DNA from: Dendrobates tinctorius
Taxonomy: Eukaryota
Direction: 5' to 3'
NCBI RefSeq assembly: GCF_039654945.1
Contig: NW_027361672.1
Location: 14,074,001 to 14,138,000, forward strand
Length of the DNA: 64,000 bases
The notes under the pieces: model-generated
Database searches by the model: none
Told to the model about the DNA's origin: nothing
What the model saw: the letters and a program-made list of their open reading frames with translations, nothing else
Shown here: positions 12,491 through 60,189 of the stretch, piece by piece
How the letters are laid out: each line of letters starts with the position of its first letter
How positions within the stretch are numbered: position 1 is the first letter of the stretch
Program-made: the position numbers and the translations under genes

Positions 12491-12500
12491 CACGCTATAA

Positions 12501-12831: not shown

Positions 12832-12832
12832 T

Positions 12833-16122: not shown

Positions 16123-16130
16123 GGCCTAAC

Positions 16131-20346: not shown

Positions 20347-20387
20347 TGCAAGCTTTCGAGACTACTCAGGTCTCTTCATCAGGCTAG
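20347..20387 (-). ncRNA. Minimal hammerhead ribozyme motif in Penelope pLTR
   Basis: CUGAUGA, stem gagac/gucuc, GAAA, palindromic AAGCUU. Confidence 0.75.
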
Positions 20388-20836: not shown

Positions 20837-20877
20837 TGCAAGCTTTCGAGACTACTCAGGTCTCTTCATCAGGCTAG
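20837..20877 (-). ncRNA. Minimal hammerhead ribozyme motif in Penelope pLTR
   Basis: Identical copy 490 bp from the first. Confidence 0.75.
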
Positions 20878-21531: not shown

Positions 21532-21572
21532 CTAGCCTGATGAAGAGACCTGAGTAGTCTCGAAAGCTTGCA
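21532..21572 (+). ncRNA. Minimal hammerhead ribozyme motif in Penelope pLTR
   Basis: ctagc CTGATGA agagac ctgagta gtctc GAAA gcttgca. Confidence 0.75.
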
Positions 21573-22225
21573 ATGTATTACCATCTTTTCAGTTAGCCAT
21601 TAAAAGGTATCAACTACTGAGGACTCTCAATCCTGAATATTTTTCACATAAAGTGTAAAATTTGGACTGGTCATGAAGGTGAAAACAGGCTAGGAGGTAA
21701 AGGGGGTAACTGTTCACAAGAACAGTAATTTTGACCAGGGGTACCCAAAATTTTACATGCCACTGTATTAATCCACACCGTTCTCCTGAGAAGCAAACAC
21801 TCATTATGGTACTGCTCTCTAGCCATTTAGCAAAAAACCTACCTTTTGTTAAAGGCACAAATTTTAAATTTTGATTAAGCAGTCCAGAGCACACGTTGGC
21901 ATTGTTTCTATGTTTTCATGCTTAGTTGCTCTTTTTCATGTCAAAATGTATGGCTTTTTGGCCACAATTCTCCCATGAATACTATGTCTGGCCAAAGCTA
22001 TCTGAACAGAAGAGTTTTGAACTAAAGGGACTGATGGACAATTTCCAATTTTGAAGGGAAGTATGCATGATGCATCTTTAATCTGCTGGGCTAAGTTTGG
22101 TCAGCCACTGTGTCTGCAGTCCTCAACATTGCCTAATTCTTGGTGTATCTTCAATGGAGCTTGAACTACACATCTTGAAAGTCCAATCTGCTTTTAACTA
22201 CCTTCTGTCTTGTTGCTGTGCTTAA

Positions 22226-27376: not shown

Positions 27377-27604
27377 GGAATTTCCTTTTAAAACCGTGTG
27401 GGGGCATCACAACACAGAACTAGACCCCAATCAGAGGACCATAAAACATCCGGACTCCTTATCTATGAACTGGTCCAATGTTTATATTTATATTTCTCCC
27501 TCTCCCATATTGATAGTTCTGCTTCACGTCACTTGTCTTATCTATTGCATTTTTTCTAGGCTGTATTGTGCATAAATATGTGACTCTTCAGATTTTGTAT
27601 TAGT

Positions 27605-27645
27605 CTAGCCTGATGAAGAGACCTGAGTAGTCTCGAAAGCTTGCA
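27605..27645 (+). ncRNA. Minimal hammerhead ribozyme motif in Penelope 3' pLTR
   Basis: CTGATGA agagac ctgagta gtctc GAAA gcttgc. Confidence 0.75.
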
Positions 27646-28274
27646 ATGTGTTACCATCTTTTCAGTTAGCCATTAAAAGGTATTAACTACTGAGGACTCT
27701 CAATCCTGAATATTTTTCTATCTACTGGCTAACACGGTACAAAGATATACATCTTCCTGCACATTGTTGTCTGCAGGTAACTTGTCTTTGGGTTCTTTTC
27801 TGCACACATTTTAGTGACTCTGTGATATTGGAAGAAAGCTATAACAAGTTATTCCAATGACAAATGAAAATACTGGGACTGTAGGAAATAACTGCCTACT
27901 GCATGGAAATCAGTGGGTTGTTATTAATAGACAAGGCTCACATAGCCTCACAGTTACTAGTGGGGGTACCATAGGGGTATGTACTGTTTTCTCTTGTTTT
28001 CATAAATAGTATAGTGCTCAGTATTAATGAGTGCACCCCAACAGATTTGTCAGAAAATGTTTAGTTTAATTTCAGAATCAACATATCAACGTTTTCTATG
28101 AGATACCATACTTCAAAATAATACCACAAATGTGGGCCATTGATTGCAAACAAGATTTTGTTATTTAGATGACTCCAAAAAGTATTTTTTTTTTAAATTA
28201 GAACATGATCATGTTATAAAAATGACTACACCGCAATGAACAAAGTTAAACTTTATTTTTTTAAGTTTACTTAA

Positions 28275-35040: not shown

Positions 35041-36282
35041 CCAATGTTTTTGAAAAAAATACATGAAACACAGAAACTTATTTTAAAACAGTAGGTCATT
35101 TTATAAGGATATACTCCCTTTAAGCATTTTTTTTAGCAATATATCTATGGTAATCACTACATTGAAAACAGATATAAACCACTTCACCAGCATAGGATTT
35201 TCAGTTTTTGCATTTTTGTTTTTTTGCTTCCCTTCTTCCCAGAGGCATAACTTTATATTTTTCCATCAATATAGCTGTGTGATGGCTTGTTTTTTGCGTG
35301 ACAAGTTGCACTTTTGAACGACACAATTGGTTTTACATATAGTAATATATATTGGTTTTCACATATAGTGTACTGTAAAACGGGAAACAAAATTCCAACT
35401 GCATTGAAATTGCAAAAAAAAAGTGCAATTTCACGTTGATCATGTGACAGGCGCCTATTTGGAGGATTTGTGACATGCTTCCGATGCCCGTGTAGGAAGA
35501 TGTACCGGGCCGGTGGTACCTCTCATGCGCCACTTCCGGGAACTGTTGGGGCTGTCACCATTGTTGCTGGGGGGAAAGCTTTCTGACCTGGACAGACCTT
35601 TGCACTCGACAGTAGGGAGCGTGTCAGAGATAAAAGGGATGGTGTGCGGGAAAGCGGGACACTTGGCGGGAAGGCAAAGTGCGCAGCAGGAGAAGGTTGG
35701 TTCACTCTCCTTGGAGTGACGAGATAGTTCCGGCCCGCACTGTAGTTCCCTGAGCCATGCGCCCACTGACTGTGAGCAACAAGTAGCTGTGTGCCCGCTC
35801 ACCCCTGTTACTGAGAATCCGTCTCGCACGGTTCCACTGATTGCCGCGGGCGAGCGACCTAAGACTAACCTGGTGATTCGTACAGCACCGGGTAGTTTCA
35901 CCCCCACCTCCACCGCTGAACTGAGTCATGCTCCGGTGGTTCCATGGACTGTGCCACATCACGTACATTGTCCCGGGAATGCAGGGTCTTGCCTAGGAGA
36001 GCCAGGATGCACCACCTTAATCAGGAGACAGTTCCTCAACTTTCTTCAGGACCATGCCAGAGACTTCAGGCATCCCTTGCGTGGGCGCCACCATGGGATT
36101 TCAAACCTTCACAGCCCGGAAACCAACAGAGTGATAAGTTTACTGGTTTCATGAACAATTGTTCTTTCCCAGATACATTATCCAATTTTGCTCCTTAGTA
36201 ACGCATTCTCTGTCTGCATGGAGTATTCCCTGTAATAAACCCTTTAACTCTTGCTCTGCCTTCTGCTAGTCACTGCATCCTG

Positions 36283-37107
36283 TGTTATGATTGAGTCACC
36301 GAGGAGGAAAAAAACAAAACACAAGCTCAGCCCAGAAAATCAGAGAGGTTGGAAACTAGCGGATTGTAGACCCCTGATCCTATCACACAATTAGCAGTAG
36401 CCGTGGAGTGTTCCTACGGTGATCCTAGACACCTTGTCACAGCCGGAGATCTACACAAGCCTAAAGAGAGAAAAGAGAAAAACTGACTGCCCCAGAGCAT
36501 ACCCCAAAGCAATAGGCAGCCCCCAACATATAATGACGGTGAAGAAAGATGAAAACACTAACACAGATAGAAAGATAGGTTGAGCAAATGATGGGGCCCA
36601 AGCTAACTAAAAAGGACAGGACAGAAAAGCTGCTGTCTGCAATCCGAGAAAACCCTGCCAAAAAATACTACCAACCCAACTGATAAGCAAAAAGGACCCT
36701 GAAGTCACTAGACTTCAAACCCTATATTAGCACTCAGAATATTCTGGAAGCAGAGCAAAAGATAACACTGATCAAGGAAAAAGAATCCAGCACACCCCCG
36801 GCAGGGGATGGCTGAACTCAAAAAACAAGGTAAGCAAAACTAAAACTAATAAGCTCAATAGCAGAGCAAAAACTTATCTTTGGGAAGCAGGAATCAGACT
36901 GGTCTCCAAGAATCCAGCAGAGAAATCACCAGTGACTCAGAAGGGCATCAGCTGCCTTATATCCAGTCTGTAGTTCCCGTTACCCAGTCACGATCCACCT
37001 GATCAGGCGTTTGGTTTCTTTCATCCAAATCATCCTCACTACCTTCCTTCACCAGAAGAGGGAGATCCTCGGACACAAAAGATGAATGAACAGATGAGCT
37101 CACAACA
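36283..37107 (-). mobile_element. Solo LTR of another family inserted in the Gypsy 5' LTR
   Basis: tgttatga...tcacaaca termini; duplicated atcctg flanks; absent from the 3' LTR. Confidence 0.85.
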
Positions 37108-37133
37108 ATCCTGTGTACCTGTTATCTCACACT

Positions 37134-37151
37134 TGGCGTAGTTGGCAGGAT
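37134..37151 (+). promoter_or_regulatory. Primer binding site, tRNA-Ser
   Basis: tggcgtagttggcaggat, 17/18 complementary to the vertebrate tRNA-Ser 3' end. Confidence 0.85.
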
Positions 37152-38042
37152 GCAGTATAACAGCACGGAGGCGGCAGACCAAGCAGTTGGGGTGAGCCCT
37201 AGGTCCTGTATCTCCCTTGGGGCAATGTTGAGAAAACTCCCTAAGTTTATGGGGAATAATACCATGTTATGCAGCTGGACTGAGCGCATTAGGGGGATGA
37301 TGAAGATGCACCCCATGACCCCTGCATTAGAAGCCGAGGTGGCCATGATCGCTCTAGATGGAGAAACCAGAGATTCAGTTAAGTTGTGACCCCCCAGAGA
37401 GCGAGACACCTTTAACAAGGTGCTTTAAATCTTGGAGGAAACCCATGAGGACCCCTTGGACCTAGGGGAGTTACGGATGAGTCTATTTAGCCGTATGCAA
37501 AGAGAGGGGGAGACGGTGACTCAGTACATGAAGGCACTTCAGGAGATCCATACCGCTATCATTAGAAAAGATGGCGTAGGTGTAGGGCCTACTGACATAT
37601 TGTTGCGGGATCAGTAGGTGACAGACTTGCGAGATGTGCTGATGAAACACGCTTTGCCAGACCGCTTGCGGGTAAATCTCCGCATGACCTTTTCTGAGAT
37701 AGGAAGTGAAGCACGCAGATGCGAGCAAGAGCAGGGGGTGACAGTCCGGGAGGGAAGGTATGGAGCGGAGAGGTATCTGTGAACATTGTCACCGAAGCCC
37801 AATGAGTGGAGGAATTGTGGAAATTAATCCAGGATATTTGAGGAGAGTTGGCTGATGCAAAGAAGAAGTCAGTAGGTACCTCAAATCAGCCAGTAGACAG
37901 AGATAGCCCTGAACTTTGCTGTGAAACAAGGATGTTCCATCGAGAGAGACCCCTCACCTGTTATAATTGTGGAGAAATTGGACATTTGGCTTGGGAGTGC
38001 CCACGACAGGATAGGCCACTTCAATGTCGTCCGTTAAACTAG
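37150..38042 (+). pseudogene. gag: Gypsy gag with CCHC zinc knuckle, disrupted
   Basis: KLPKFMG, RMQREGETVTQY, LLRDQ, CYNCGEIGHLAWEC; in-frame stops. Confidence 0.88.
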
Positions 38043-41000
38043 AGGGCTCCGAGCCTGGGGGACGCCACCCGGAGCCTGAACAGTCACGAAGGAGCATCAG
38101 AAGTCCCTCAAATTTAGTCTCAACATGCCCTCAAGTCTGGGCCGAAATTGACCGTCAAGCAGCACGTTGTCTGGTGGATACTGGTTCACTTGTGACTATG
38201 ATGCCTGAAACCTACTTCCGGCGACACTTTCCTGAGGCAATGCAACCTGAGTGGGGTCCAGTGATAAAATTGACAGCTGCCAATCACTTGCCCATCCTGG
38301 TCGCAGGGGTGGTCTGGATGCAAATAACCATCTGCGGCAAAGACCTGGGTTGGAAGGGAGTGGTGTTGACAATTGGAGAAGCAGGTAACAGACATGCGGT
38401 CATCCGGGGGTTGAACGTGCTGAAGGAATTCGGGAGTCTCTTCATCAATGAGCCCTCAGATGTTACCTTGAAGCAGTGGAGCCCGCACACTCCCCAAAGG
38501 AGAGTATTCCAACAGTTAAACAGTGTAGCTCAAGCGGAGTCAGCTAGTGATGGAGGGACGTTCGGAAAGGTGATTGTACCAGCCTCTGCTAGACTCGTTT
38601 TGCCACCAGGACAGTGCTTACCCTGCCTGTACGGGCTTGTACCACTCTGGAAGGAGTTGAGATACAGATCGAGCCAGCTACTATGGAACAACTGCCCCCA
38701 GGGCTCCTTGTGGTGTGAACACTAGCCATTGTACATGACAGGACTGTCTCAGTATGCTGTGTCAATTGGAGAGAAGATAACATGATGCGGTCTCCCAAAA
38801 GTAAAGTGGCGCGGATTCTGGGCATGCCAGAAGAATTGATATAACCACAGGCCGTGCAATTGATGGTGAAACAAGGACATCCTTGGATCGTGGCTGTAGA
38901 TACGTCTCTGACACCAGAACCCCAGCATTTACGAGAGGGGCGTCATATATTAGAACAGATGCGGGCCAAGCTGGCAGACCTTACTCCGCTACAGATCCAG
39001 CAGGTGGAAGCTTTACTGGGGCGATATCAGGATGTGTTCGCACGTCATGAGGATTTTGGCTGCATTACAGCAATCACACATGAGATTCCGACTGGGAATG
39101 TCGCACCCATAAGATAGCGGTACAGTCAAATTCCATCGCAACTATATCAAGAGGTGAAAGGTATGCTAACTAGATGCTGCAAAAAGGCATCATATGGGAG
39201 AGTCCAAGTCCGTGGGCCGCCCCCATCATGCTAGTGCGAAAGTAGGATGGTACACTACGTTTTTGTGTAGACTATCGCAAACTCAATGCCTGCACCATGT
39301 GAGATTCCTATCCATTTCCCTGGATTGAAGAATCCTTGTCTGCACTAGGAAGCACCAAATTCTTTTCATCGTTAGATCTAGCCAGCGGCTATTGGCAGGT
39401 GCTGATGTCTGAGCAGGATTGGTCAAAGACCCCCTTCATACTCCCCATGGGACTATATGAATTCAACCGGATGCCGTTCAGTCTGGCCAATGCCCCTGGA
39501 ACTTTTCAACGGTTGATGGAGAGATGTTTAGGTGATGAACTTTGAAGCCACGCTCATTTATTTAGACGACATCATTGTATATGCCCTTCATTTGAAGAAA
39601 ATTTACAAAGACTGGAACAGGTGTTGAGCAGCCTTCAAAGACACGGTTTAAAAGTAAAGCCTCAGAAATGTCATCTGTTGCGCACTCAAATCGAGAATCT
39701 GGGCCATGTCATCTCTGCTAATGGGGTGAAACCGTCCCGAGAGACAATTGCTGCAGTGCAGGATTGGAGTATCCCGACGACTGTGAAAGACGTCCGAGCA
39801 TTCTTGGGGCTGACCAGGTATTATCGGCGTTTTGTGAAGAATTTTATCCACATAGTGAACTCGCTGTTAGAACTTTTATAGGCAGTGCCCTCAAGCGCCA
39901 AGAATCGGACTATCCAATGGGGAGACCATCAGGAAAAGGCATTTCAAGCTCTGAAGAAGGCATAGACTGAAGCACCAGTGTTGGCTTATGTTGACTTCTC
40001 TCAACCATTTATTCTCCACACAGACGGAAGCTTGCATGGACTTGGGGCTCTGTTGTAGCAGATGCAGGACGGGAGAGAGAGGGTGATCGCTTATGCGAGT
40101 CGGTCCCTTCATGATTCCAAATGAAATCCTGACACAATTCCTTCAAACTAGAGCTGCTGATGTTGGTGTCGGTATAAAGGAGAAGTTTGCGAAATACCTA
40201 TCTGGGACTGAAGTACTGGTGCGCACCGATTATAACCCTTTGGCCCATCTGGAAAATGTGAAAGTAGGAGCTATGGCACAATGATGGGTGGCTAGGATGG
40301 CAAAGTTTTGATATAAAAATACCTACAAGAGAGGGGCTGAGAATACTCATGCTGACGCCTTATCCAGAGTGAAACATGGGAAACCTGGGTACAGCCGAGA
40401 TGAGGAATTAGAAGATGAGGAGATTCCCAAGTTCTGAGAATTCTGCCAGGATGGTGGCAGCTATGCAGGAGCAGGTGCAAGTGTTGGCCCAAGAGGGTGT
40501 CTTGGGATGATCCCATGATGAGTGGGTTTGGTTACAACAGGAAGATGGTGAACATGCTATCAAGACAGTGGGTAACGTCTAAGCAACTTCCCAGTCAGAG
40601 ATAGAGAGATGCCCTGTCTCCAGAGACTCTGTGCGACAGTGGGAAAGACTTCAAATGAGAACTGGACTGCTATATCGGAAGGTCCAACTTCAACAGGAGC
40701 TGGGTGTCACGTGGCAAGTGGTAATTCCGGAGACCCTCTTTTCCAAGGTGGCCACAGAGGCGCATGAAAGGGGAGCACGCTTCGGCCAAGAGAAAACCTT
40801 TCAGTGGTTACAAAGGTTACTTTATCATCCTCGGCTGAAGGCTATAATGGAAGAGACCTCTAGGCTGTGCAGAAGCTGTGAATTGGCAAAACCACCAGAG
40901 CAGAGAGCTCCCACACAAATCAGTGTGACTTCTGCTCCTCTGGAGGTGCTGATGACAGACTATATGACTATTGGGCCGGCTCATCAGGGGTACGAGCATT

Positions 41001-41734
41001 GTCTGGTAATGACGGACCAGACCACTTTACAAAGTTCGCTGTCATGACCCCAACACGTGATCAGACTGCTGAATCCGCCACGCATGCCATTTGTAAGAAT
41101 TTCATTCAAGTGTACGGTTGCCCAAAGTGAATACACTCCGACCAGGTGGCCTGTTTTCTAGGAAAAGTAATAGAAGAGTTATACCGTCTGCACCAGATCG
41201 AGAAGTCTTGCACAACGCCATATCATCCTCAGGGAAATGGAGCCTGTGAATTGTTCAACCGCACCCTAATTTAAATGCTGAGAACACTTGAAGAAGACCA
41301 GAAGGCCCGATGACCCGAGTTCATAGCTGAGTTAGTATGGGAGTACAATAACCGAACACATCAAACCACTGGTTAAACTACGTATACCTTGCTATTTGGC
41401 CATTCAGGAAAAGAGATCACAGAGCTGGAGCTGGATCCAGAGGAAGACTACCCACGGATGGGTGTCCACCTGGGTCCGAGAACATCATCAGCGTCTACAG
41501 ACTTTACATCCCCTGGTGCTGACTAGATTTCAGGAATTGGAGCATGCAGAAAAAACTCCTCTGCAGGGGACAGATCTCCACGCTGGAGACCATGTGAAAT
41601 GGCAAATCAACTCTGAAGGGCCCGTTTACGAAATTCAGCCTCAGGGAGGAGAGAACTATGCCACTCGTAAAGTTCACCGGAACATGCTTCGGCCCTGTCT
41701 GTCAAGAGACCTTGATCAAGTGGAAGAGGTGTAA
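38024..41734 (+). pseudogene. pol: Gypsy pol (PR-RT-RNaseH-IN), disrupted
   Basis: LVDTGS, LDLASGYWQ, MPFSLANAPGTFQRLM, YLDD (tatttagacgac ~39559), VRAFLGL, TDYNPL, integrase Zn and core remnants. Confidence 0.92.
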
Positions 41735-43331
41735 GATGCTTCTGAAGTACCCCCACCAGTCATAGTAGATTGTGAAGAGGAAGAAAGTCCTGAACAGCCA
41801 TCCGAAGATCTACGGGAGGGACAAGTACCTGAAGTTCCCGAGGAGTCTGCCCCAGTGGAAACAGACGCGCTCCCGCCCTCACCTATGCAACCTGACTCAA
41901 CCACCCAATGCGAATCGGCTACTCTTTCTGACTTACGGCGCTCCGAACGAACAACAGCTGGAATACCCCCCAAGCGATACAATCAGGACCAATTTATTTG
42001 GCAATGTCTTGTCCAAGAACTAGAAGATTGCCAAAGCATTTTACAAGAACACTCGCCCATGGAATGGCGAGCAAAAGAAGAGGGGGAGTGTAAGAAGATT
42101 GACCGGGCCGGTGGTACCTCTCTTGCGCCAATTCCGGAACTGTTGGGGTTGTCACCATTGTTGCTGAGGGGGAAAACTTTCTGACCTGGACAGACCTTTG
42201 CACTCGACAGTAGGGGGCGTGTCATGGATAAAAGGGACAGTGCGCGGGAAAGCAGGACACTTGGCGGGAAGGCAGAGTATGCAGCAGGAGAAGGTTGGTT
42301 CACTCTCCTTGGAGCGACACGATAGCTCAGGCCCACATTGTAGTTCCCCGGCCTATGCACTGACTGTGAGCAACAAGTAGCTGTGTGCCTGATCATCCCT
42401 GTCACCGAGAATCCATCTCGCACAGTTCCACTGATTGCTGAGGGCGCGCGACGTAAGACTGACCTGGTGATTCAAACAGAGTTGAGTAGTTTCACCCCCC
42501 TGCCTCTGCCGCTGAACTGAGTCACACTCCGACGGTTCCACGGACTGTGCCACATCACATACATCGTCCCAGGAATGCAGGGCTTCACCTAGGAGAGCCA
42601 GGATATGCCGCCTTCCTTGGGACACAGTTCCTCAACTTTCTTCAGGACCACCCCAGAGACTTCACGAGTCCCTTGCGTGGGCGCCGCCGTTGGATTTCAA
42701 GCCTTCACAGCCCGGAAACCAACAGACTGATAAGTTTACCAGTTTCATGAACAATTGTTCTTTCCCAGATATATTATCCAATTTTACTCCCTAGTAACCC
42801 ATTCTCTCCCTGTGTAGAGTATTCCCTGTAATAAACCCTTTAACTCTTGCTCTGCCTCCTGCTCGTCACTGTATCCTGTGTACCTGCTATCTCACACCCG
42901 CATAATTAAATGCCAATGTCAGAGAGTGACAGTGGCATTTAACATGTTAGCAGGTGTGGTGGATCTTGATTCCACTTGTGGCTATTAGGGGCACAATGAC
43001 AGCTGATCAAGTCAGCTGTCATGTGCTTGAAAAGATGCGGGCTCAGCGCCAGAGGCCACATCAAAGAGGGGTGGTGACATATCTATGTATTTCTTGAACT
43101 AACCATTCGAAGCCCATGTGGATAAAATAATTTACCATCTTATTGCTACTTGCAGAAAAATATATTTAGGCTACATTCCCACAATGAGGCTTTGGTGAGT
43201 TTTTGGTGTTGCAGATTTTTTTGCTGAATTTCTTCACCTGTTAATTAAATAGGGTTACTTGCATATTTTTTATTGCGTTTTTTTCCGTGTGTTTTTATTG
43301 CAGTTTTGGCACTGTAGTTTGTCTTTATTTG

Positions 43332-47278: not shown

Positions 47279-48984
47279 TGACGAAGCATCCATGTATTTT
47301 TCAATGCTGTGCATAAGTAGACATAATTCACGCTGTGTTTTTTTCATTTATGCTTTGCAGAGTAAATAATATTCAGCAGCCATATGTAAAATTATAAGGA
47401 ATTACAGCTAGTTCAATGGTTAATGGAGCCTTGTGCAAATGAGCCTAAAATACAAAGGATAAAGATTTGCAGTTTGCAAAAAGCAAAGGTCTTCAGAACA
47501 AACCATTAGAAACATTGTCCGGATCATGGCAAATCAGTGTAAAAGCATTTTCCTTTTAATATGATCGCCCTATAACTGGGATTCATTTAAGCAGCATCTT
47601 GTGGTAGCTTGGGAAGTAATTTCCATTTATTTTATGCCATTACAGTTTACATTTCTATATAAGTAGAAAGAAACCTGGACCAAAAAGCACCTATTAAGAA
47701 AACAGGATTTATAGTCCCATCAATTCTGATGATCTTTTCTCCAGCATTGACACATCTATTCTAGTAGTAATCACTACTAGAAAACAGCCTGCCGACTCAC
47801 CGACGCTACTACTCTGTGAATAAGACAAGAAACCTGTAACATTAGTCTTTTGGGAGTTTTATTTGACTGAATAGAGCGCACTGAAAATGAAAGGTCTTTA
47901 AAGGGATATTCTCATGTTATTACATTGCTTTAGTTAGGCAGAGAAAGCAAGTTAATTGAAATCTTGTTTATTTTCCTGCTATCTGCTGTCACTCTCCTGC
48001 AATAAGAGCTTTTATCTTACATAGTGTACAACTTGTTTACAAGAAGCTTGGTTACCAGTGTGCAGCCAAGTGTTTGCGGTAGTTATATTCCAGGAGAGAA
48101 GTTAAAGGGCGTCTTAACACAGAATGACTCTAAAATTCAAGTACAGTTGCTTGGTGCACCCTTGGCATGGCCAAACATTAAAGGGCACCTTTTCCCTACT
48201 TGATTTCCCTTTTCCCCACTACCCCCCTTTTCTTTGATTAGCAACTTTAGCTTTTTAGAGCCAGAGGAGGGAGGAGATAGCAGTAAAGCAAGTGTGTGGG
48301 AAGGTGCACTGAACTGTTTGGCCATACCAAGGGTGTACAAGATGCCTGTACTTGGTTTGGATGGAATATTCTTTAGGTTTGGAAGACTCCCTTTAACTCC
48401 TAACATCCCAGTCAGTGATTTTTATGCAGCAGTTGTCTGCTCAGGTCCCTTATGCTCTCAGCTCCCCTCAGGCCTATTAACACTCATGTAGAATCACAAT
48501 CCCTTTTGACGCAGCATCAGCAGTTTCCAGAGCAGTTCTTCTAATCTTAGCTCTCACTTCCTGAGCTGGTTGTTTGTTCGAAATCCATGTTATCTCTATA
48601 TGTAAATGAAAAATGAAGCCACAAACCAGAGCTGTCACTTAATGAAGAGCACCAGCCCCCAGGAAGTAAAGCGATTGTAAGGAGACTGCTGAACTATCAG
48701 TTACTCTAGAGACAACTTGAGAATACCTTTTTTACATCCTGTACAAGCAGTTATAGTGTGCAGAGCTGTCACCTAATCTGAAGCAGCTACCATTTTCACC
48801 AGATCATCAGTTGGCCATTTCCATTTATGGCATAGTATTATTGATACTTTCAGAAATAGTTGTTGCAAATCTAATCTGCTTTAAAGAGAAGAGCGTAACT
48901 TGTTCATTAACCCTCGAATGATGAAGCTAGTTTTGGCGTTTGTGACCAGGCCCCACTTTTCAATTCTGATATGTGTCACTTTTC

Positions 48985-51053
48985 TATTATTATTATCGTG
49001 CATTTGTATAGCGCCATTTATTCCATGGCGCTTTACATGTGAAAAGGGGAAATATAGACAAGTATAATAAACATGTGTAAGACAAGGGACACACAAGTAC
49101 ATAAGGAGAGGGGACCCTGCCCGCGAGGGCTCACAGTCTACAGGGATGGGTGAGGATACAGTAGGAGAGGGTAGAGCAGGTCATGCGGTGGTTCAGTAGA
49201 CCGAGGATCATTGCAGGCTGTAGGCTTGTCGGAACAGGTGGGTCTTCAGGTTCTTCTTGAAGGTTTACGTTGATGGTGAGAGTCTGATGTGTTGCGGCAG
49301 AGTTCCAGAGTATGGAGGAAGCACGGGAGAAGTCTTGTATGCGGTTGTGGGAAGAAGAGATAAGGGGAGAGTAGAGAAGGAGATCTTGAGATGATCGAAG
49401 GTTGCGTGCGGGTAGGTACCTGGAGACCATGTCACGGATGTATGGAGGAGACAGGTTGTGGATGGCTTTGTATGACATGGTTAGGGTTTTGAATTGGAGC
49501 CTTTGGGCAATAGGAAGCCAGTGAAGGACCTGGCATAGGGGGGAGGCTGGGGAGTAGCGGGGAGGCAGGTGGATTAGTTGGGCTGCAGAGAGTAGGATGG
49601 ACTGGAGTGGTGCCAGAGTGCTAGAGGGGAGGCCAGAGAGGAGGAGGTTGCAGTAGTTGAGGCGGGAGATGATAAAAGCATGCACTAGTGTTTTTGTGGT
49701 TTCGTGGTTGAGGAATGAGCGGATCTGGGAAATATTTTAGAGTTTGAGGCGGCAGGAGGAGGCGAGGGCTTGGATATGTGGTTTGAAAGAGAGCGCAGAG
49801 TCGAGGATCACCCCAAGGCACCGAGTGTGCGGGACTGGGGAAAGAGAGCAGCCATTGACATTGATGGATAGATCTGGTGGAGGGGTAGAGTGAGATGGGG
49901 GAAAGATGATGTATTCTGTTTTGTCCATGTTCAGTTTGAGAAAGCGAGCAGAGAAGGAGGCTGAGATAGCAGACAGACATTGTGGGATTTCGATCAGTAA
50001 AGAGGTGAGGTTAGGTCCAGATAGGTAGATCTGTGTGTCATCAGCAGAGAGGTGATACTGCAAACAGTGGGATTCTATGAGCTGTCCCAAGACGAAGGTA
50101 TAGATGGAGAATAGTAGGGGTCCTAGGACAGAGCCTTGAGGAACACCTACAGACAGGGGGTGAGGTGAGGAGGTGGTGTGTGAGAGGGAGACACAATGTT
50201 CGGTCTGTTAGATATGACGAGATCCAGGATAGGGCCAAGTCTGTGATGCCAAGAGATGAGAGAATCTGTAGCAGGAGGGAATGGTCCACGGTGTCGAAGG
50301 CAGAGGACAGATCCAGGAGAAGGAGGACAGAGTAGTGTCGCTTGCTCTTGGCGGTTAGTAAGTCGTTGGTGACTTTAGTTAGGGCAGTTTCAGTTGAGTG
50401 ATGCGGTCGGAAGCCAGATTGTAACCGGTCAAAGAGGGAACAGGAGGACAGTTCAAGATATACATGCTGTTCCAGTAGTTTTGAAGCGTAAGGGAGAAGA
50501 GATATCGGGCGATAGTTATACACAGAGGATGGGTCAAGGGAGGGCTTTTTGAGAATGGGTGTGATTGAGGCATGTTTGAAGGCTGAGGGAAAGACACCAT
50601 TTGTAAATGAAAGGTTGAAGAGGTGTGTTAGAGATGGGATGAAGACTGTGGCCAAGTTAGGGATGAGGTGGGACGGGAGTGGGTCGAGGGCACAAGTGGT
50701 GAGGTGTGATCTTGACAGAAGGGTGGAGAGCTGATCTTCTGTCATGATGGAGAAGCTGGCTTTTGCAGAACAGGGCTGAGCGGCTAAGAGGGGCATTGGG
50801 GGCTGCGGGCCAAAGTTTTGTCTGATCGTATCGATCTTCTGCTTAAAGAAGGAGGCAAAGTCTTCAGCAGAAATGAGAGGAGAGGGAGGAGGTGCTGTGG
50901 GATGGAGTAGAGAATTGAAAGTGTTGAAGAGCAGTTTAGGGTTGTGATCCAGGGAGGATATGAGAGATGCAAAGTAAATTTGTTTTGTGGCAGAGAGCGT
51001 GGACTTAAAGCTGGCAAGGGACTGCTTGTATGCGTTGAAGTGCTCAGTAGAAT
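48985..51053 (-). mobile_element. L2 LINE, 5'-truncated, frameshifted RT
   Basis: [46 protein letters not shown]; short TAA tail near 48985. Confidence 0.93.
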
Positions 51054-51331
51054 GTAATCTAATAATAACTCTAAATGCTACTACTTATCCAAGTAATTCT
51101 GATATTGTTTTTTGTGACATATTATACTTTCTGTTAGGGCTCATACTCACTTGCGAGAGACTCGCACGATTCTCGTGCGAGTCTCTCGCATGAAAACCTG
51201 GCACTGCCGCCAGCACTCGGACCGGAGCGTGCGGCTACATGTATTTCTATGCAGCTGCACGCTCCAGTCCAAGTGCCGGCAGCAGTGCCGGCTTTTCATG
51301 CGAGAGAGGATTAAAAAGATATATGTGACAT

Positions 51332-52114
51332 GCACATGTTTTTAATCCTTTTTTTCCGTGCTCAGCACGGTTTGGGAGACCCCACCCTCCTCCTTTGTGA
51401 CATGCACATAAATGAGCTGTCTTTCACCAACAAGCCCATATACTGGGAAGCGCCTGTCTGTATCCTGTTCATTCAGACACTGTTCACATGTTCAGGTTTT
51501 GAATACATTAGATAGGGACTGCTTCGTGAAGGGTTACCGTGAAGTGGTGAAGCAGCTTGGTATGTATTTTTTGCAAAAAATGTGTCGACTAAATATCCTG
51601 TATTTGTTATACAGCACTTGCTGATTACTTTTATATGTTTTTGACTGCAGAGTATTTTTTCAAATTTGTCATTTTGTGCTCTCTTGTTGTGGTTCAGCCA
51701 TTGGGTGGTGTGGGCATTGTCTTACCGACTTGTTCACACTTGTGCATGTCACATATATGTTTTTAATTCTTTTTTTCCGTGCTCAGCACGGTTTGGGAGA
51801 CCCCACCCTCCTCCTTTGTGACATGCACATAAATGAGCTGTCTTTCACCAACAAGCCCATATACTAGGAAGCGCCTGTCTGTATCCTGTTCATTCAGACA
51901 CTGTTCACATGTTCAGGTTTTGAATACATTAGATAGGGACTGCTTTGTGAAGGGTTACCGTGAAGTGCTGAAGCAGCTTGGTATGTATTTTTTGCAAAAA
52001 ATGTGTCGACTAAATACCCTGTATTTGTTATAAGCACTTGCTGATTACTTTTATATGTTTTTTACTGCAGAGTATTTTTTCAAATTTGTCATTTTGTGCT
52101 CTCTTGTTGTGGTT
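51332..52114. repeat. Tandem duplication, ~421-bp period, about 1.9 copies
   Basis: 51360 gctcagcacgg matches 51781; both copies end ctcttgttgtggtt. Confidence 0.9.
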
Positions 52115-54618: not shown

Positions 54619-56390
54619 TTACAGTCACTACCAAATCTTTTGGGAGCATGTTCAATAACTTTACAGGTCAGGTAGTGAGATACCAAGAGATACCCTCATT
54701 CCTCTTGGTATCTGTTTTGATCTATGTGTTTATTTTTATGCTGCAATGTCTATTGTCTGTACAAGTCCCCTCTACAATGTAAAGTGCTGCGGAATATGTT
54801 GGCGCTAGAGAAATAAAATTATTATTATTATTATTAATAATGCTTTAGAAATTATGATGAAATTGCACTTTCCCTAACCATAAGCAGTGACTTTGTATTC
54901 TCCGCTGGGTCTGAGAAAAATCATTTACTGCATTGGTTTTACTGGGACCATTTACAAATTTATGAAGCTGTAAAGATATTATATCTTGACTAAGTCTTTT
55001 CTTCTCTAGGGTAAATTAATTTGGATTTAATAACCTATTTTACCATGCCTAAAACTGGACTTCAATCTAAAAACATTTCTTAAAGGAGGAGAAATATATT
55101 ATCTTAAAATAAAGCATGCTAAAAACATGCTATATTCACCCTTTCCCAACATTGCTTTTTTCCATTTTTGTGTTTTCATTTTTTCATTGTCTTCTTGCAA
55201 GAGGAATAACTTTATTTTTCTTACAACATAACCATGTGAGTGCTTATTATATGAGAAACGAGTTGTACTTTTGACTGACACCATCTATTTTATTATGGGA
55301 TGTATTGGAAAACAAGAAAAAAAATTCTAAGAGTGACAAAATTGTGAAAAAAAAGCACAATTCCACAATTTTGTTTTTTATTTATTTATTTTTTTTCCAT
55401 GTTCATTATGTGGTAAACATGACTCGGCAATTTTATTTTTTAAGTCAGTACAATTACGGAGCTAACTAACATGCTTTTTTTTTTATTTAGGTGGCGAAAA
55501 AAAATGTGAAAATTTGTAGGAAAAAAAAAAATCAGCCATGATCTGCCATGAAAGATGTGGACCGAGTTCCCAAGCCTGCATCAACATTAGGGAGCTTGTG
55601 TAGGGAAGGTGACCTGACGGACGGACGGACTAGTCAGAGTGAAGAAAGATAGGTTTGCACAGTGTAGGTAGGAGACAGTGATTACAGTGGGGAAACAACT
55701 AGAAAAGTGTAGTGGACGTGCAGTACCTTGGGATGACCATTAGATGGCAGGGTGGAGTGTGAGCAAAGGACTTTACAGCAGCTTAGGGCTTTAGAAACCG
55801 TTGGTCATGGGGGGCGTGGTGACAGTTAGTGACAGTTTCAAGGAACCGGGGAAGTTATAAATTCTGAGGGAGGGTTCCAGAAGGTTCCAGTCCCCAGGGG
55901 GAGCCCAGGTGACAGGAGGACTACGCCAGTCTGTGTGCCCTGAGGAGAATCCGACCAAGGGGACTGAGGAGAGGAAACGTCAGGGGGGTGGTCCTGACAG
56001 GAAAGGACCGCAGCAGAGACGAGGCTCTGGGTGGAAGACACCGTATGTGTAACGACGAAACTGACCAGTAAAGTGCTGATGGTGTACGGGCCTAAGGCAG
56101 CCACAGTAACCGAGCTGTCAGGATTGTCACAGTGTGAGACGGGACGTTACGTATAAATACGTCCCTAGTGTAACGTACGGTGTTGAAGCGGCCCTGGACA
56201 CGGAGGGCAGAGAGAGAGATATCTCGGTGTACCGCGAGGACCGTCAGTCGGACGGTGAGCAATAAACTTGGACCTGTTGCACCCAGAATCTGCCTCATCG
56301 TGTCTCTGTTATCATCTCTGCGCGGTAAGAAGTGGGACCACCCCCTATCACCCCCCCCCCAGCTCGGCACCCCACCACCGACGCTACATT

Positions 56391-56408
56391 TGGCGTAGTC
56401 GGCAGGAT
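56391..56408 (+). promoter_or_regulatory. Primer binding site, tRNA-Ser (perfect)
   Basis: tggcgtagtcggcaggat, 2 nt after the 5' LTR. Confidence 0.92.
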
Positions 56409-56599
56409 CGCCGCCGCTAATACGCTATCTTCTGCGGCAGGCCTGCAACTGAAGGACTGAGGAAAACTTGGACTGCTCTATTTCGGATTATAAATACCTG
56501 TGGACTAAAAATTACTGACCTGTGGATTACAAATTGGGACGCTGTGTCGGATCTGTGTTGCTTGCAGAGGATCCAAGGCAGTAGCTGATTCTGCCCAAG

Positions 56600-57727
56600 A
56601 TGGCGGTATTACTTCAGCGCAGAGGAGAGGTCCGGGTGTTTGCAGTTGTTCAGAGTGGACTGGGACCCCCTCCAACGTACCCCAAAAGGAAGCAATATAT
56701 GCCCGAAGACCGACGTTTCCATATATTGGACCCTGGCAGATGGATGGAAAGGTCTGCCAACGCCCCACCCAGCAGGAGGAGTGGCACAGAAGAAAAACTT
56801 GGCTGCGGCTGTCTGACGCCATTCGAGTGCTGCCCAACGGACGGTATGAGATGCTGTGGGTGTCGGGGCATCGGCCGCCTAGAGTGGCAATGGCGGCGAG
56901 AGATGGAGCTGCACCAGAAGTCATCTTCAGATTTACGGGCAGGCAGCGGGATGCTGAGCCGGGGAGCGGAGCCTGAGGGGAGTCAGCGAGAACGGCTGCC
57001 ACCAATACCAGCAGAGGACTTCTCAGCGGAGCCCCCGAGTCCGGAGGGAAGGCCCGCAGGACCGTGGAGCAAGGAACGGAGGCTGCGGGGGAAACTGCGT
57101 GATGATGGAACGGAGGCCGCAGCGCCGGGGAAGGTGAGAGTACCCCCGGCCCTACCAGTGCCTCCGCAAGCAGCCCCCACCATTCTGCTGCAGCACGCGG
57201 CCCCCTGCGCACCGGAAGGCCTAGTTACCACGGGCCCCGTGGTGTATGCAGAGCTGAGCGAGGCCCCCGCTCATGTCCCCGAACTACCCCGCCCGGAGTC
57301 ACCAGTGCAGAGCTCACCCAAAGAAGACGCTGCTGCGCTTTCCCTGCTAATAGCAGCTGCATCGTTGAAATCGGCCGTTACTCCAGCTCCGTTGGAAGTA
57401 GTGGATGCGGCCTGTCCTGAGGCCGCGGTTATGCCGCTGCTGGAGTCGGCTGCGGCCAACTTAGCGGGCCCTGTGATTCCAGCCCCCGAGGACCCGGTTC
57501 TCCCCATTTGCCACCTGACCCCAGCGGCTGCTGGGCCGCAGAAATCTTCGGCCGTTTCTGTCTTGCGGTCTTTTTCAGCGGAGTCCCGCCCACCGGACTC
57601 CAGGGCCCGTGCTGTTCCCTCCGTGTGGGAAGCGGAGGTGATCAGGAAGAAAAAGGCCCGGGAGCAGGAAGTGTGGAACCTGCTCCACACTCAAGGAGAG
57701 GCCGTCATGGAAAAGAAGAGGACTTGA
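56600..57727 (+). CDS. Hypothetical 375-aa protein inside the non-autonomous LTR element
   Basis: Uninterrupted sense ORF downstream of the PBS, strong Kozak context aagATGG; Cys cluster, Pro/Ala-rich middle, charged C-terminus; GC-rich, so a chance ORF is not excluded. Confidence 0.55.
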   Translation: MAVLLQRRGEVRVFAVVQSGLGPPPTYPKRKQYMPEDRRFHILDPGRWMERSANAPPSRRSGTEEKLGCGCLTPFECCPTDGMRCCGCRGIGRLEWQWRREMELHQKSSSDLRAGSGMLSRGAEPEGSQRERLPPIPAEDFSAEPPSPEGRPAGPWSKERRLRGKLRDDGTEAAAPGKVRVPPALPVPPQAAPTILLQHAAPCAPEGLVTTGPVVYAELSEAPAHVPELPRPESPVQSSPKEDAAALSLLIAAASLKSAVTPAPLEVVDAACPEAAVMPLLESAAANLAGPVIPAPEDPVLPICHLTPAAAGPQKSSAVSVLRSFSAESRPPDSRARAVPSVWEAEVIRKKKAREQEVWNLLHTQGEAVMEKKRT

Positions 57728-58644
57728 ATGGACACCCTCAGTATCCCCGTGGAGCCCTCACCTCTGTCCATTGAGAGTGGTATAGACTGTCAGGAGTTCG
57801 ATGCACCGTTGTGCAGATTATAAGGACAGTTGCATTTAGAAAAAAGTTTTGTTGTTGTTTAACTGATGCAACTATTTTCTCTCTCTTTCTTTCTTCTTTC
57901 TATGTTCTTTATATACGAAAATATGTTTACCTGACAGAACGGGGATACGGAAAAGTGGAGGAGTGTCCAGGTCCAAGGAAGGGGGGGAGGAAGAAAGAGG
58001 AAATGCAATGTTATGTTATATTTTGGTTTTAAAAGTAAGAGAAAATGGAAAAAAAAAAATTATAAAAAAAATGGGTACTTGTGCTATTATAAAGTTGTAT
58101 GATGTATAATATGCAAAGTAAAATGCAACAGGTCCGGGTAAGGGAAGGTCTGCGGGACCAAAGGAAAGTGTGAGATCCGGTAGGGATCTAAGAGTTGAGG
58201 TCTGGGAGACCGGGACGCCGACCATGACATGTAATTGAAAGAAGGAAAATGAATGGGAAGATGTGAGAAAGACAGCCGTCCTAGGTCAGGTCCCCGACAC
58301 CACGGACACCCCTGAAGAAGGAAAGGCGGGCGCCGGCAATGATCTGGTAGGTGAGTGGCCTCGATCATGGCGTACCGGATAGTGAAAGGTAACAGTAGGG
58401 GAGAGTAGGGGAAAGATACACGCCGTAGAGAGAATACGGGTGTACCTTGCCCAATTTGAAAGACGTTGTCATGTGGCGTGCGCGCTGGTGAGTAGCAGTA
58501 GGCTGCTCAGAGCATAGTGCTCCCAGTGTGGTTCGGCCCCCGCAGATAGTGGGTTTGGCTCAACTTCTGGTCCGACAACAGAATGTAGGTGTAGATTCAG
58601 AACGACGAAGGCAGGGATGACGATTGTCGAGGACGACAATGGAC

Positions 58645-58658
58645 AAAGGAAGGGGGAG
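58645..58658 (+). promoter_or_regulatory. Polypurine tract
   Basis: aaaggaagggggag directly before the 3' LTR. Confidence 0.9.
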
Positions 58659-60189
58659 TGTAGGGAAGGTGACCTGACGGAAGGACGGACTAGTCAGAGT
58701 GAAGAAAGATAGGTTTGCACAGTGTAGGTAGGAGACAGTGATTACAGTGGGGAAACAACTAGAAAAGTGTAGTGGACGTGCAGTACCTTGGGATGACCAT
58801 TAGATGGCAGGGTGGAGTGTGAGCAAAGGACTTTACAGCAGCTTAGGGCTTTAGAAACCGTTGGTCATGGGGGGCGTGGTGACAGTTAGTGACAGTTTCA
58901 AGGAACCGGGGAAGTTATAAATTCTGAGGGAGGGTTCCAGAAGGTTCCAGTCCCCAGGGGGAGCCCAGGTGACAGGAGGACTACGCCAGTCTGTGTGCCC
59001 TGAGGAGAATCCGACCAAGGGGACTGAGGAGAGGAAACGTCAGGGGGGTGGTCCTGACAGGAAAGGACCGCAGCAGAGACGAGGCTCTGGGTGGAAGACA
59101 CCGTATGTGTAACGACGAAACTGACCAGTAAAGTGCTGATGGTGTACGGGCCTAAGGCGGCCACAGTAACCGAGCTGTCAGGATTGTCACAGTGTGAGAC
59201 GGGACGTTACGTATAAATACGTCCCTAGTGTAACGTACGGTGTTGAAGCGGCCCTGGACACGGAGGGCAGAGAGAGAGATATCGCGGTGTACCGCGAGGA
59301 CCGTCAGTCGGACGGTGAGCAATAAACTTGGACCTGTTGCACCCAGAATCTGCCTCATCGTGTCTCTGTTATCATCTCTGCGCGGTAAGAAGTGGGACCA
59401 CCCCCTATCACCCCCCCCCAGCTCGGCACCCCACCACCGACACTACATTTGCATATAACGTAACTGTACGTCATTTGTCAGTAAAGAGTTGACGGGGTTA
59501 TCCAGGACTTTTTTGCATATGGCGATAAGAAGTGACAGGCAGGTAGTTAATGGTTACCTGTCGGTTCTGCCCAGTGATGATTTCTACTGGCTCAGAGCAG
59601 TCACTGATCGCTCCTGCCAGAGATTCCCCTGCTTCTGCTGACGTCATGTTTACAGAGCAGGGGCTTACTTTCAGCTCATGGGGCATCTCTACTGATGTTA
59701 TCCTGATTGACAGTTGGCACCCTTATGTCTAACTGCAGGGATCCCACTGTCAACATCATGATGTCAACAATAACTCCTCATCAGCACAGCAGACCAAAGT
59801 GGAATAGTTGCTCTGCTGATGAGAGGTGAAATACAGCAGAGGAGTCAATTGAGCTGGCAGCGATCATCTCCATGAAACTCCAAATTACCATCAACAATAA
59901 TTGGTGGCCGTGGCAAGGGAGATGGCTCCACAGGCGCTACGTATTTTTTGAGCAATGACCCGTGGAAAACATTGTGGATTTAAAGAGCTAGGCTGGGGTC
60001 ATACTTGTGAGAAACTCACATGAGTCTTTCATCACATTACCCGGCACTGCCACCGGCACTCAGGACCGGAGTGTGCGGCTGCATGTATTTCTATGCAGCT
60101 GAGCGCTCCGGTCCAAGTGCTGGTGGCAGTGCCGGGTATTGAGGTGTGAGATTCGTTCAAGTGTCTCGCAAGTCTGACCCCGAGCTTAG

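What the first reader, a model, noticed from the sequence alone, without database searches (positions are those of the whole stretch)
55599..59447. Very young pol-less LTR element carrying one intact ORF of unknown function
Seen: 790/789-bp LTRs differing by about 4 substitutions and 1 indel, TATA-like gtataaat and aataaa in the LTR, a perfect tRNA-Ser PBS and a PPT. The 2270-bp interior has no recognisable protease, RT, RNase H, integrase or CCHC knuckle. It holds one 375-codon ORF in strong Kozak context with a Cys cluster (CGCLTPFECCPTDGMRCCGC), a Pro/Ala-rich tract and a charged C-terminus (WEAEVIRKKKAREQEVWNLL). Inference: a recently mobile non-autonomous retroelement family that keeps its own accessory protein, possibly metal-binding or a highly derived Gag. 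It is the best candidate here for an undescribed system.
Basis: partly seen in the sequence, partly recalled or inferred. Interest (0 to 1): 0.75.

Follow-up and report, generated by a model that had tools for sequence, protein, structure and literature searches.

The report
Truncated-ORF non-autonomous frog LTR retrotransposon
This is a real, roughly one-million-year-old copy of a very abundant frog mobile element that has no enzymes of its own and carries a shortened version of the family's private protein; it is a good example of a parasitic LTR element rather than a new kind of system.

Summary
There are two LTRs of 790 and 789 bp that differ by 4 substitutions and 1 indel. They have TG..CA ends, a TATA box and an AATAAA signal. 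An 18-nt primer site that I read as tRNA-Ser, a polypurine tract and a near-perfect 4-bp target duplication are also present. The 2270-bp interior has no pol.

The 375-codon ORF starts at the first AUG of the predicted transcript and has no Pfam, Atlas or remote-sequence relatives. The only homologues are two copies of the same element family in the poison frog Dendrobates tinctorius.

Against the closer of those copies the real frame gives dN/dS of about 0.40, versus 0.8-1.07 in control frames, and the net indels keep the frame. So the family does maintain this gene. That relative ends in about 70 more residues resembling a cold-shock domain (Pfam, below threshold). The window copy lacks that block, so it is a truncated variant. 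AlphaFold2 predicts it as mostly disordered.

Read depth suggests thousands of copies, and the truncated form appears as contigs in three runs from different studies.

An old Ty3/Gypsy-like element in the same window shares the primer site, the polypurine/LTR-start motif and the 4-bp duplication. It is a candidate helper lineage.

The scan has already noted this family many times elsewhere in this genome.

Verdict: a new variant of a known kind, of moderate interest.

The parts
55595..55598 (+). 5' copy of the 4-bp target-site duplication (CTTG)
   Evidence: It matches the 3' copy TTTG at 3 of 4 positions. The D. tinctorius copy L001 has a perfect 4-bp TSD, TCTG/TCTG.
55599..56388 (+). 5' LTR, 790 bp, TGTAG...CTACA. 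TATAAAT at 56152-56158 and AATAAA at 56261-56266.
56391..56408 (+). Primer-binding site, 18 nt, complementary to the 3' end of tRNA-Ser (assignment from my own knowledge), 2 nt after the LTR
   Evidence: exact match here, chance expectation 0.00. The same PBS is present in L002 and, with 1 mismatch, in L001.
56600..57727 (+). 375-codon ORF at the first AUG of the predicted transcript. PPTY at residues 24-27, a Cys cluster at 69-88, a Pro/Ala-rich disordered middle and a confident C-terminal helix at about 340-375.
57705..57727 (+). Approximate junction where the roughly 210-225-bp block coding the cold-shock-like domain of the D. tinctorius relative is absent. The stop codon TGA is at 57725-57727.
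   Evidence: Contigs from three runs span this junction collinearly (table 8).
58047..58075 (+). A-rich tract at the boundary between the ORF module and the conserved 3' block. Many contigs from other element types diverge here.
   Evidence: One search shows loose ends at 58034-58038 and a depth jump from 58006.
58076..58644 (+). Non-coding conserved 3' block, 88% identical to the D. tinctorius copy against 76% for the ORF. Its last ~280 nt are also conserved in the divergent relative L002 and contain conserved hairpins.
58645..58658 (+). Polypurine tract AAAGGAAGGGGGAG, abutting the 3' LTR
   Evidence: The motif GGGGGAGTGTARG is found only here and at the Gypsy-like element.
58659..59447 (+). 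3' LTR, 789 bp
59448..59451 (+). 3' copy of the target-site duplication (TTTG)
   Evidence: A DNA contig of run X5 covers 59422-59902 without any difference, so the 3' junction is real in that sample.

Best explanation
This is a young copy of a very abundant, non-autonomous LTR retrotransposon family of a frog, probably a poison frog. By LTR divergence it is about 1 million years old.

Shown: the element carries every cis signal needed for reverse transcription and integration. These are the LTRs with promoter and poly(A) signal, the tRNA-Ser primer site, the polypurine tract, the TG..CA ends and a 4-bp target duplication. It has no protease, RT, RNase H or integrase.

Inferred: it must therefore be copied in trans by another element's enzymes. 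The most likely helper is a tRNA-Ser-primed Ty3/Gypsy-like lineage. A degraded member of that lineage lies in the same window and shares the primer site, the polypurine/LTR-start motif and the TSD length.

Shown: the single ORF is the family's own lineage-specific protein and is kept under moderate purifying selection.

Inferred: in the closest relative found, the D. tinctorius copy, the protein ends in a cold-shock-like nucleic-acid-binding domain. I infer that the full protein acts as a surrogate for Gag/NC by binding the element's RNA and getting it into the helper's particles.

Shown: this copy belongs to an abundant subfamily in which that domain is deleted. What remains is a mostly disordered Pro/Ala-rich protein with an N-terminal PPxY motif, a Cys cluster and a C-terminal basic helix.

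Inferred: the truncated protein is most likely dispensable for mobilisation of this subfamily.
For: Anatomy. The ORF itself has no Pfam hit and no long ORF elsewhere in the interior resembles pol; the non-coding 3' part has no open frame of note.

Family and ORF:
- The only homologues among 5.8 billion and 1.84 billion proteins are two D. tinctorius TE copies, each flanked by LTRs; one carries the exact PBS, the other differs at 1 position.
- Omega is 0.40 in the true frame against 0.80-1.07 in four control frames. Differences by codon position are 83/78/113. Net indels preserve the frame.
- The ORF starts at the first AUG in a strong context.
- The cold-shock-like C-terminus is present in the relative (Pfam CSD E 4e-4, 20.6 bits; 8 of 10 best PDB matches are cold-shock proteins) and is absent here.

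Abundance:
- In a 2-Gb DNA run the unique flanks lie at depth about 2-9, the interior at about 3,400-32,000 (ORF about 10,000-21,000) and the LTR and 3' block at about 9,000-70,000.
- Runs of only 20-75 Mb still assemble the element.
- Contigs from three runs in different studies run collinearly across the CSD-less junction.

Helper: the element at 35490-42897 has CCHC, RVT_1 and Integrase_H2C2 domains. It also has a tRNA-Ser PBS after a 2-nt spacer, the PPT/LTR start GGGGGAGTGTAAG and a 4-bp TSD.

Age: 4 substitutions in 789 bp, using the rate of 2.5e-9 per site per year applied to D. tinctorius LTRs in PMC11152451.
Against: - The helper link rests on short shared cis motifs, with no longer DNA or protein similarity.
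- The cold-shock assignment is below Pfam's gathering score, and the single-sequence AlphaFold2 model of that domain failed with pLDDT 39.7.
- Selection was measured on one pair of non-orthologous copies only.
- No run is clearly RNA, so transcription and translation are not shown.
- The depth figures are sums over contigs and give only a rough copy number.
- The TSD has one mismatch, so a recombinant between two copies is not excluded.
Confidence: 0.72

Rival explanations
1. The ORF is a highly derived Gag. It would have an MA/p12-like N-terminus with a PPxY late-domain motif and a membrane- or metal-binding Cys cluster. The capsid would be lost or unrecognisable, and NC would be replaced by a cold-shock domain in full-length copies.
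For: - It is the first ORF after the PBS and leader.
- The PPTY motif and 6 of 7 clustered Cys are conserved between the two species.
- A nucleic-acid-binding-like domain sits where NC would be in the relative.
Against: - There is no Pfam gag family, no CCHC, and no relative among 1.84 billion proteins except copies of this same family.
- AlphaFold2 gives no capsid-like helical domain and a mean pLDDT of 41.7.
- There is no similarity to the gag of the Gypsy-like element in the window.
- PPxY is a 4-residue motif that can arise by chance in a protein with 13% proline.
Confidence: 0.15
2. In this subfamily the ORF is a functionless relic. It is open only because the copy is young and the region is G+C-rich, and the element propagates purely as a non-coding parasite through its cis signals.
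For: - The putative RNA-binding domain is deleted, yet the CSD-less form is an abundantly assembled form.
- With only about 0.5% divergence between the LTRs, the ORF would very probably stay open by chance.
- The non-coding 3' block is more conserved than the ORF, 88% against 76%.
- The divergent relative L002 has lost the N-terminal domain.
Against: - The signal of selection in the true frame (omega 0.40) covers the N-terminal 100 residues (about 0.3) and the C-terminal helix, both of which are retained here.
- The first-AUG position and strong start context are retained.
Confidence: 0.35
3. The ORF module is a captured host mRNA, retro-copied with its 3' UTR and poly(A) tail into an LTR element.
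For: - An A-rich tract at 58047-75 ends the ORF plus AT-rich UTR-like module. This is exactly where contigs of other element types diverge and depth changes.
- Repeated capture of cold-shock domains by bird endogenous retroviruses is documented (PMC12287698).
Against: - No host homologue was found in searches that include annotated frog proteomes.
- There is no canonical poly(A) signal just upstream of the A tract.
Confidence: 0.1
4. It is a deleted endogenous retrovirus (class I/epsilon-like provirus derivative) mobilised by a retrovirus rather than by a Ty3/Gypsy element.
For: - A 4-bp TSD, long LTRs with TATA and AATAAA, and a PPxY motif are all compatible with gamma/epsilon-type retroviruses.
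- ERV1-type elements are the youngest LTR elements in D. tinctorius (PMC11152451).
Against: - There is no gag, pol or env remnant.
- The only element in reach that shares the PBS, spacer, PPT/LTR-start motif and TSD length is Gypsy-like.
Confidence: 0.15

Closest known systems
Non-autonomous LTR retrotransposons that keep one ORF (plant TR-GAG elements; also LARD/TRIM as the non-coding extremes)
   Same: Complete LTRs, PBS and PPT but no pol. Mobilisation in trans by an autonomous partner. High copy number. One retained ORF.
   Different: - The ORF has no recognisable gag domain, so the TR-GAG definition is not met.
- The 2.27-kb interior is neither TRIM-sized nor LARD-sized.
- The host is a vertebrate (frog).
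- The relative's protein ends in a cold-shock-like domain.
Bird endogenous retroviruses that captured cold-shock domains (PMC12287698)
   Same: LTR retroelements carrying a CSD-type nucleic-acid-binding domain of presumed cellular origin. Capture appears to have been repeated.
   Different: - Those are ERVs with gag, pol and env, classed by RT. This family has no pol and looks Gypsy-associated.
- The copy in this window has lost the domain.
- The CSD call in the frog relative is below Pfam's threshold.
Mouse ETn/MusD and VL30, and mammalian MaLR: non-autonomous vertebrate LTR elements
   Same: Vertebrate LTR elements that lack enzymes. They share terminal cis regions with a helper and amplify to thousands of copies.
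   Different: - ETn and VL30 are non-coding and ERV-derived (my own knowledge, not tested here).
- This family maintains a private ORF under selection and shares cis motifs with a Ty3/Gypsy-like element.
tRNA-Ser-primed Ty3/Gypsy element in the same window (35490-42897)
   Same: tRNA-Ser PBS after a 2-nt spacer. PPT ending GGGGGAG followed by an LTR start TGTA(A/G)G. LTRs of about 800 bp ending in ACA. A 4-bp TSD.
   Different: - It is autonomous in design, with CCHC gag, protease, RT and integrase.
- It is old, with 87% LTR identity.
- There is no detectable similarity in the LTR body, leader or proteins.

Membership tests
LTR retrotransposon (structural definition) | Two direct long terminal repeats with TG..CA ends | tested here: met
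   790 and 789 bp, 99.4% identical, TGTAG...CTACA.
LTR retrotransposon (structural definition) | tRNA primer-binding site next to the 5' LTR and a polypurine tract next to the 3' LTR | tested here: met
   PBS at 56391-56408 and PPT at 58645-58658. The tRNA identity (Ser) comes from my own knowledge and was not checked against a tRNA gene.
LTR retrotransposon (structural definition) | Target-site duplication | tested here: inconclusive
   CTTG against TTTG, 3 of 4 positions. It is perfect (TCTG) in the D. tinctorius copy L001 and 3 of 4 in L002.
Non-autonomous LTR element | No protease, RT, RNase H or integrase in the interior | tested here: met
   The ORF has no Pfam family. No long open frame exists in the remaining interior.
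TR-GAG | The single ORF is a recognisable Gag (capsid / Retrotrans_gag / zinc knuckle) | tested here: not met
   No Pfam hit at E up to 10. No Gag among the profile-search hits. No confident fold.
TRIM / LARD | Size classes: TRIM is a sub-kb element with short LTRs; LARD has a long non-coding interior of several kb | tested here: not met
   The element is 3849 bp with 790-bp LTRs and a 2270-bp interior that is half coding. The size definitions are from my own knowledge.
Endogenous retrovirus | Remnants of gag-pro-pol(-env) of retroviral type | tested here: not met
   None found.
Cold-shock domain proteins (PF00313) | A CSD scoring above Pfam's gathering threshold | tested here: not met
   The window ORF has no hit, and tblastn with the relative's domain finds nothing in the element. 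The relative P0001 scores 20.6 bits against a cut-off of 27.
Ty3/Gypsy-dependent element (helper assignment) | LTR termini, PBS and PPT shared with an autonomous Ty3/Gypsy element of the same genome | tested here: inconclusive
   The PBS, 2-nt spacer, GGGGGAGTGTARG junction and 4-bp TSD are shared with the element at 35490-42897. That copy is old, and there is no longer similarity.

The most novel reading that the evidence does not exclude
The family's private protein is a new kind of parasite-encoded packaging adaptor. It would be a disordered, lineage-specific protein (PPxY, Cys cluster, basic helix, with or without a cold-shock domain) that replaces Gag and delivers the non-autonomous element's own RNA to the particles of a Gypsy helper. 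That would explain how a pol-less element reached thousands of copies. The CSD-less subfamily would then show that the N-terminal adaptor part is enough.
Probability: 0.12. Interest if true: 0.7.

Novelty: new variant of a known kind. Interest (0 to 1): 0.4.

Why it matters
Poison-frog genomes are swollen by LTR elements. A pol-less family that reaches thousands of copies while keeping a private protein with no homologues shows how parasites of parasites contribute to that growth.

The contrast between CSD-bearing and CSD-less subfamilies is a natural experiment on whether such a protein is needed in cis.

The strongly conserved non-coding block upstream of the polypurine tract marks a likely recognition signal for the helper.

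For this particular copy the practical result is classification. It is a truncated member of a family the scan keeps meeting, not a separate undescribed system.

Tried and rejected
- Pfam on the ORF at E up to 10: nothing.
- Rfam on the element: only two sub-threshold miRNA-like chance matches.
- Word-indexed protein search with the whole ORF: one hit, D. tinctorius. With the N-terminal 110 residues alone: nothing.
- Profile search of 1.84 billion representatives: only two D. tinctorius TE copies.
- ESM Atlas with the N-terminus and with the whole ORF: no usable hit.
- AlphaFold2 of the ORF with a 2-sequence alignment: mean pLDDT 41.7. Only the C-terminal helix is confident, so I did not run fold searches, which would have been meaningless.
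- AlphaFold2 of the relative's cold-shock-like end from a single sequence: pLDDT 39.7, uninformative.
- tblastx and sensitive blastn of the element against the rest of the window: no hits, so there is no other copy and no similarity to the Gypsy-like element beyond short cis motifs.
- Six-frame reading of the 3' interior: no coding remnant.
- RNA evidence: every run holding the element is kept as contigs and none is on record as RNA, so expression could not be judged.
- Consensus folding of the conserved 3' block: several conserved hairpins and 4 compensatory pairs among 3 sequences, but z is only -1.8, which is suggestive and no more.
- Literature: no description of this family, or of CSD-carrying or tRNA-Ser-primed non-autonomous LTR elements in amphibians, in the library searched.


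Full report
**1. The observation**

A repeat search and a pairwise alignment confirm two direct repeats, 55599-56388 (790 bp) and 58659-59447 (789 bp). They differ by four substitutions and one single-base indel. Both begin TGTAG and end CTACA.

Each LTR holds TATAAAT (56152-56158 in the 5' LTR, with a second at 55856) and one AATAAA (56261-56266).

Two bases after the 5' LTR lies TGGCGTAGTCGGCAGGAT (56391-56408). By my knowledge of vertebrate tRNA-Ser this is the complement of its 3' end including CCA. No tRNA gene is present in the window to check it against. The 18-mer has a chance expectation of 0.00 in the window.

The polypurine tract AAAGGAAGGGGGAG (58645-58658) abuts the 3' LTR.

The flanks give a 4-bp duplication with one mismatch (CTTG / TTTG). 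The closest D. tinctorius copy has a perfect one, TCTG/TCTG.

The interior is 2270 bp. The ORF 56600-57727 (375 codons) has A at -3 and G at +4. There is no ATG between the predicted start site and its own ATG. The ORF has no Pfam family at E up to 10. The rest of the interior has no open frame worth the name. So the description is correct.

**2. Is the ORF more than chance?**

The ORF lies in 62% G+C DNA where long open frames are easy to get. Dinucleotide shuffles of the segment give a mean longest open frame of 177 codons, and 1 shuffle in 1000 is open throughout. The opposite strand has 235- and 139-codon open frames. Openness alone is therefore weak evidence, all the more so in a copy this young.

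The better evidence comes from a relative. The only protein homologue in the word-indexed search is an "uncharacterized protein" of Dendrobates tinctorius, P0001 (431 aa, 55% identical over the full length). It lies in an intron of a SLAIN-type gene, inside an LTR element collinear with ours. Nucleotide identity is 76-80% in the LTR and ORF and 88% in the 3' interior.

Across this roughly 24% nucleotide divergence:
- The frame is kept. Gaps are 3, 3, 3 and 15 nt, plus a 1+20-nt pair that restores the frame after a short shifted stretch.
- Differences fall 83/78/113 on codon positions 1/2/3.
- dN/dS is 0.40 in the true frame, against 0.80-1.07 in four control frames. It is 0.50 in the antisense frame that shares third positions with the true frame.
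- The first 100 residues give about 0.3.

The family therefore maintains this gene under moderate purifying selection. That estimate is diluted by the neutral decay of the older D. tinctorius copy.

**3. What the protein is**

A profile of the two proteins, searched against 1.84 billion cluster representatives without any length filter, finds only P0001 and P0002. P0002 is a frame-drifted product of a second, more divergent D. tinctorius element (L002). That element has LTRs 96% identical and the identical PBS. The N-terminal 110 residues alone find nothing, and the ESM Atlas gives no usable hit.

AlphaFold2, with only two sequences in the alignment, gives a mean pLDDT of 41.7. One confident helix spans residues about 340-375. 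The protein is 13% Pro and 13% Ala.

Features conserved between the two species:
- PPTY at residues 24-27 (a PPxY motif);
- six of the seven clustered cysteines at 69-88;
- YAEL at 216;
- the C-terminal basic helix.

None of this demonstrates Gag ancestry or metal binding.

**4. The key correction: this copy carries a truncated gene**

P0001 runs about 70 residues past the point where our ORF stops. That tail resembles a cold-shock domain. Pfam CSD scores E 4e-4 and 20.6 bits, below the 27-bit cut-off. Eight of the ten best PDB sequence matches are bacterial cold-shock proteins aligned over the whole domain, all individually weak at E 0.17-1.9.

The DNA alignments show that the window copy lacks this block of roughly 210-225 bp. 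Similarity resumes right after it, and a TGA follows at 57725. tblastn with the domain finds nothing in the element. A single-sequence fold of the domain failed, so the CSD call remains probable, not proven.

First-stage notes of this scan report many pol-less LTR elements with a cold-shock-domain ORF and a tRNA-Ser PBS on other pieces of this same genome, and one was followed up. I could not read those sequences. I treat the notes as leads that agree with what I saw in the D. tinctorius copy.

**5. Abundance and the status of the truncated form**

Contigs of four public runs of one organism were laid on 55000-60000. In the 2-Gb DNA run the unique flanks sit at depth about 2-9. Three flank contigs have zero differences, and one spans the 3' junction. 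The interior sums to about 3,400-32,000 (about 10,000-21,000 over the ORF). Across the LTRs and the 3' interior the figures range from about 9,000 to 70,000, highest in the 5' part of U3 and in the 3' interior. The tool warns that these sums are not copy numbers. Even so, runs of only 20-75 Mb still assemble the element at depth 10-50. Together this indicates copies in the thousands.

Contigs from three runs in different studies cross the CSD-less junction with 3-5 differences: 57392-58068, 57419-57955 and 57413-57986. The truncated form is therefore an abundant subfamily, not a private lesion.

Two runs also show an alternative joint, 57687 to 57786, whose content is unknown.

At several sites all contigs differ from the window. 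For example, at 56655 they give the Asn that D. tinctorius also has. This is as expected for a few private mutations.

With 4 substitutions in 789 bp and the rate of 2.5e-9 per site per year used for D. tinctorius LTRs (PMC11152451), the insertion is about 1 million years old.

**6. Modular structure**

Depth jumps at about 58006. Many contigs of other sequence types join at 58034-58038, next to an A-rich tract at 58047-58075.

The block from there to the polypurine tract is non-coding, yet it is more conserved between species than the ORF (88% against 76%). Its last 280 nt are also conserved in the divergent L002 and contain conserved hairpins, such as ATTGTCG/CGACAAT just before the PPT. Four pairs show compensatory change, but the folding z-score is only -1.8.

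I read this block as a shared cis signal for the helper, for packaging or for plus-strand priming context. This is an inference.

**7. A candidate helper lineage in the same window**

The PBS pattern has one other match, at 37134 with one mismatch. It belongs to an old LTR element at 35490-42897 with LTR identity 87% and an insertion of about 830 bp in the 5' LTR at 36286-37113.

The broken frames of that element hold a CCHC knuckle, a DTGS protease motif, RVT_1 and Integrase_H2C2. That is a Ty3/Gypsy-like design.

It shares these cis features with our element:
- the 2-nt spacer before the PBS;
- a PPT ending GGGGGAG followed by an LTR start TGTA(A/G)G; the 13-mer occurs only at these two places, with 0.1 expected by chance;
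- LTRs of about 800 bp ending in ACA;
- a 4-bp duplication (CCCG).

No longer similarity exists. This favours a tRNA-Ser-primed Gypsy-type helper over a retrovirus, but it does not identify the actual partner.

**8. Mechanism**

Shown:
- The cis machinery is complete and the element has no enzymes.
- The family is high-copy.
- The ORF is constrained at the family level.
- This subfamily lacks the cold-shock-like end.

Inferred:
- Transcription runs from the 5' LTR and priming uses tRNA-Ser.
- Reverse transcription and integration are carried out by the proteins of a Gypsy-type helper that recognise the shared PBS, PPT, termini and probably the 3' block.
- The full protein acts as an RNA-binding surrogate for Gag/NC that favours its own RNA.
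- The truncated protein is probably dispensable, or retains only an adaptor role.

**9. Comparison with what is known, and novelty**

It works like other non-autonomous LTR elements (TR-GAG, LARD and TRIM in plants; ETn and VL30 in mouse) but meets none of their definitions (see the membership table).

Capture of cold-shock domains by LTR retroelements has been reported for bird ERVs (PMC12287698).

I found no paper on such a family in amphibians, and I could not query Dfam or Repbase.

I therefore class it as a new variant of a known kind. This copy is a truncated, ordinary member of that family. Interest is moderate at 0.4. It would be higher for the family as a whole if its protein proves to be a packaging adaptor.

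Noticed in passing
window 35490-42897: An old autonomous Ty3/Gypsy-like LTR retrotransposon with LTRs about 87% identical and a 4-bp TSD (CCCG). It has a tRNA-Ser PBS at 37134-37151 (1 mismatch) and broken gag (CCHC), protease (DTGS), RT and integrase frames. It is the candidate helper lineage for the element under study.
   Followed up: partly
window 36286-37113: An insertion of about 830 bp inside the 5' LTR of that Gypsy-like element, flanked by a repeated CCTGTGT. It is A-rich and of unknown type.
   Followed up: no
window 58380-58658; L001 11897-12175; L002 11800-12081: A non-coding block just upstream of the polypurine tract is conserved across three divergent family members, more so than the ORF. 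It has conserved hairpins and a few compensatory changes. It may be a cis signal for the helper.
   Followed up: partly
window 20241-21645 and 27243-27755: Tandem 490-bp units (100% identical over 300 nt) with inverted copies 97-99% identical nearby and about 6 kb away. This is the stretch another first-stage note calls Penelope pLTRs with hammerheads.
   Followed up: no
window 13178-13437 and 15863-16122: A pair of 260-nt direct repeats, 97% identical and 2685 bp apart. It could be another small LTR-type element.
   Followed up: no
window 8001-10000 and 48001-52000: Strong opposite GC skews (-0.30 and +0.26) at two regions that are 72% complementary inverted copies of each other (8193-8750 / 49299-49856). 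There is also a 421-bp tandem repeat at 51336-52032.
   Followed up: no
L002 9195-12818 (D. tinctorius): A second, more divergent member of the family, with LTRs 96% identical and the exact tRNA-Ser PBS. Only the middle of the ORF is still recognisable; the N-terminal domain and the cold-shock-like end are gone.
   Followed up: partly
window 57687-57786: Contigs of two runs join these two points with unknown content between them. This is an alternative form of the region around the stop codon and may be the CSD-bearing version.
   Followed up: no
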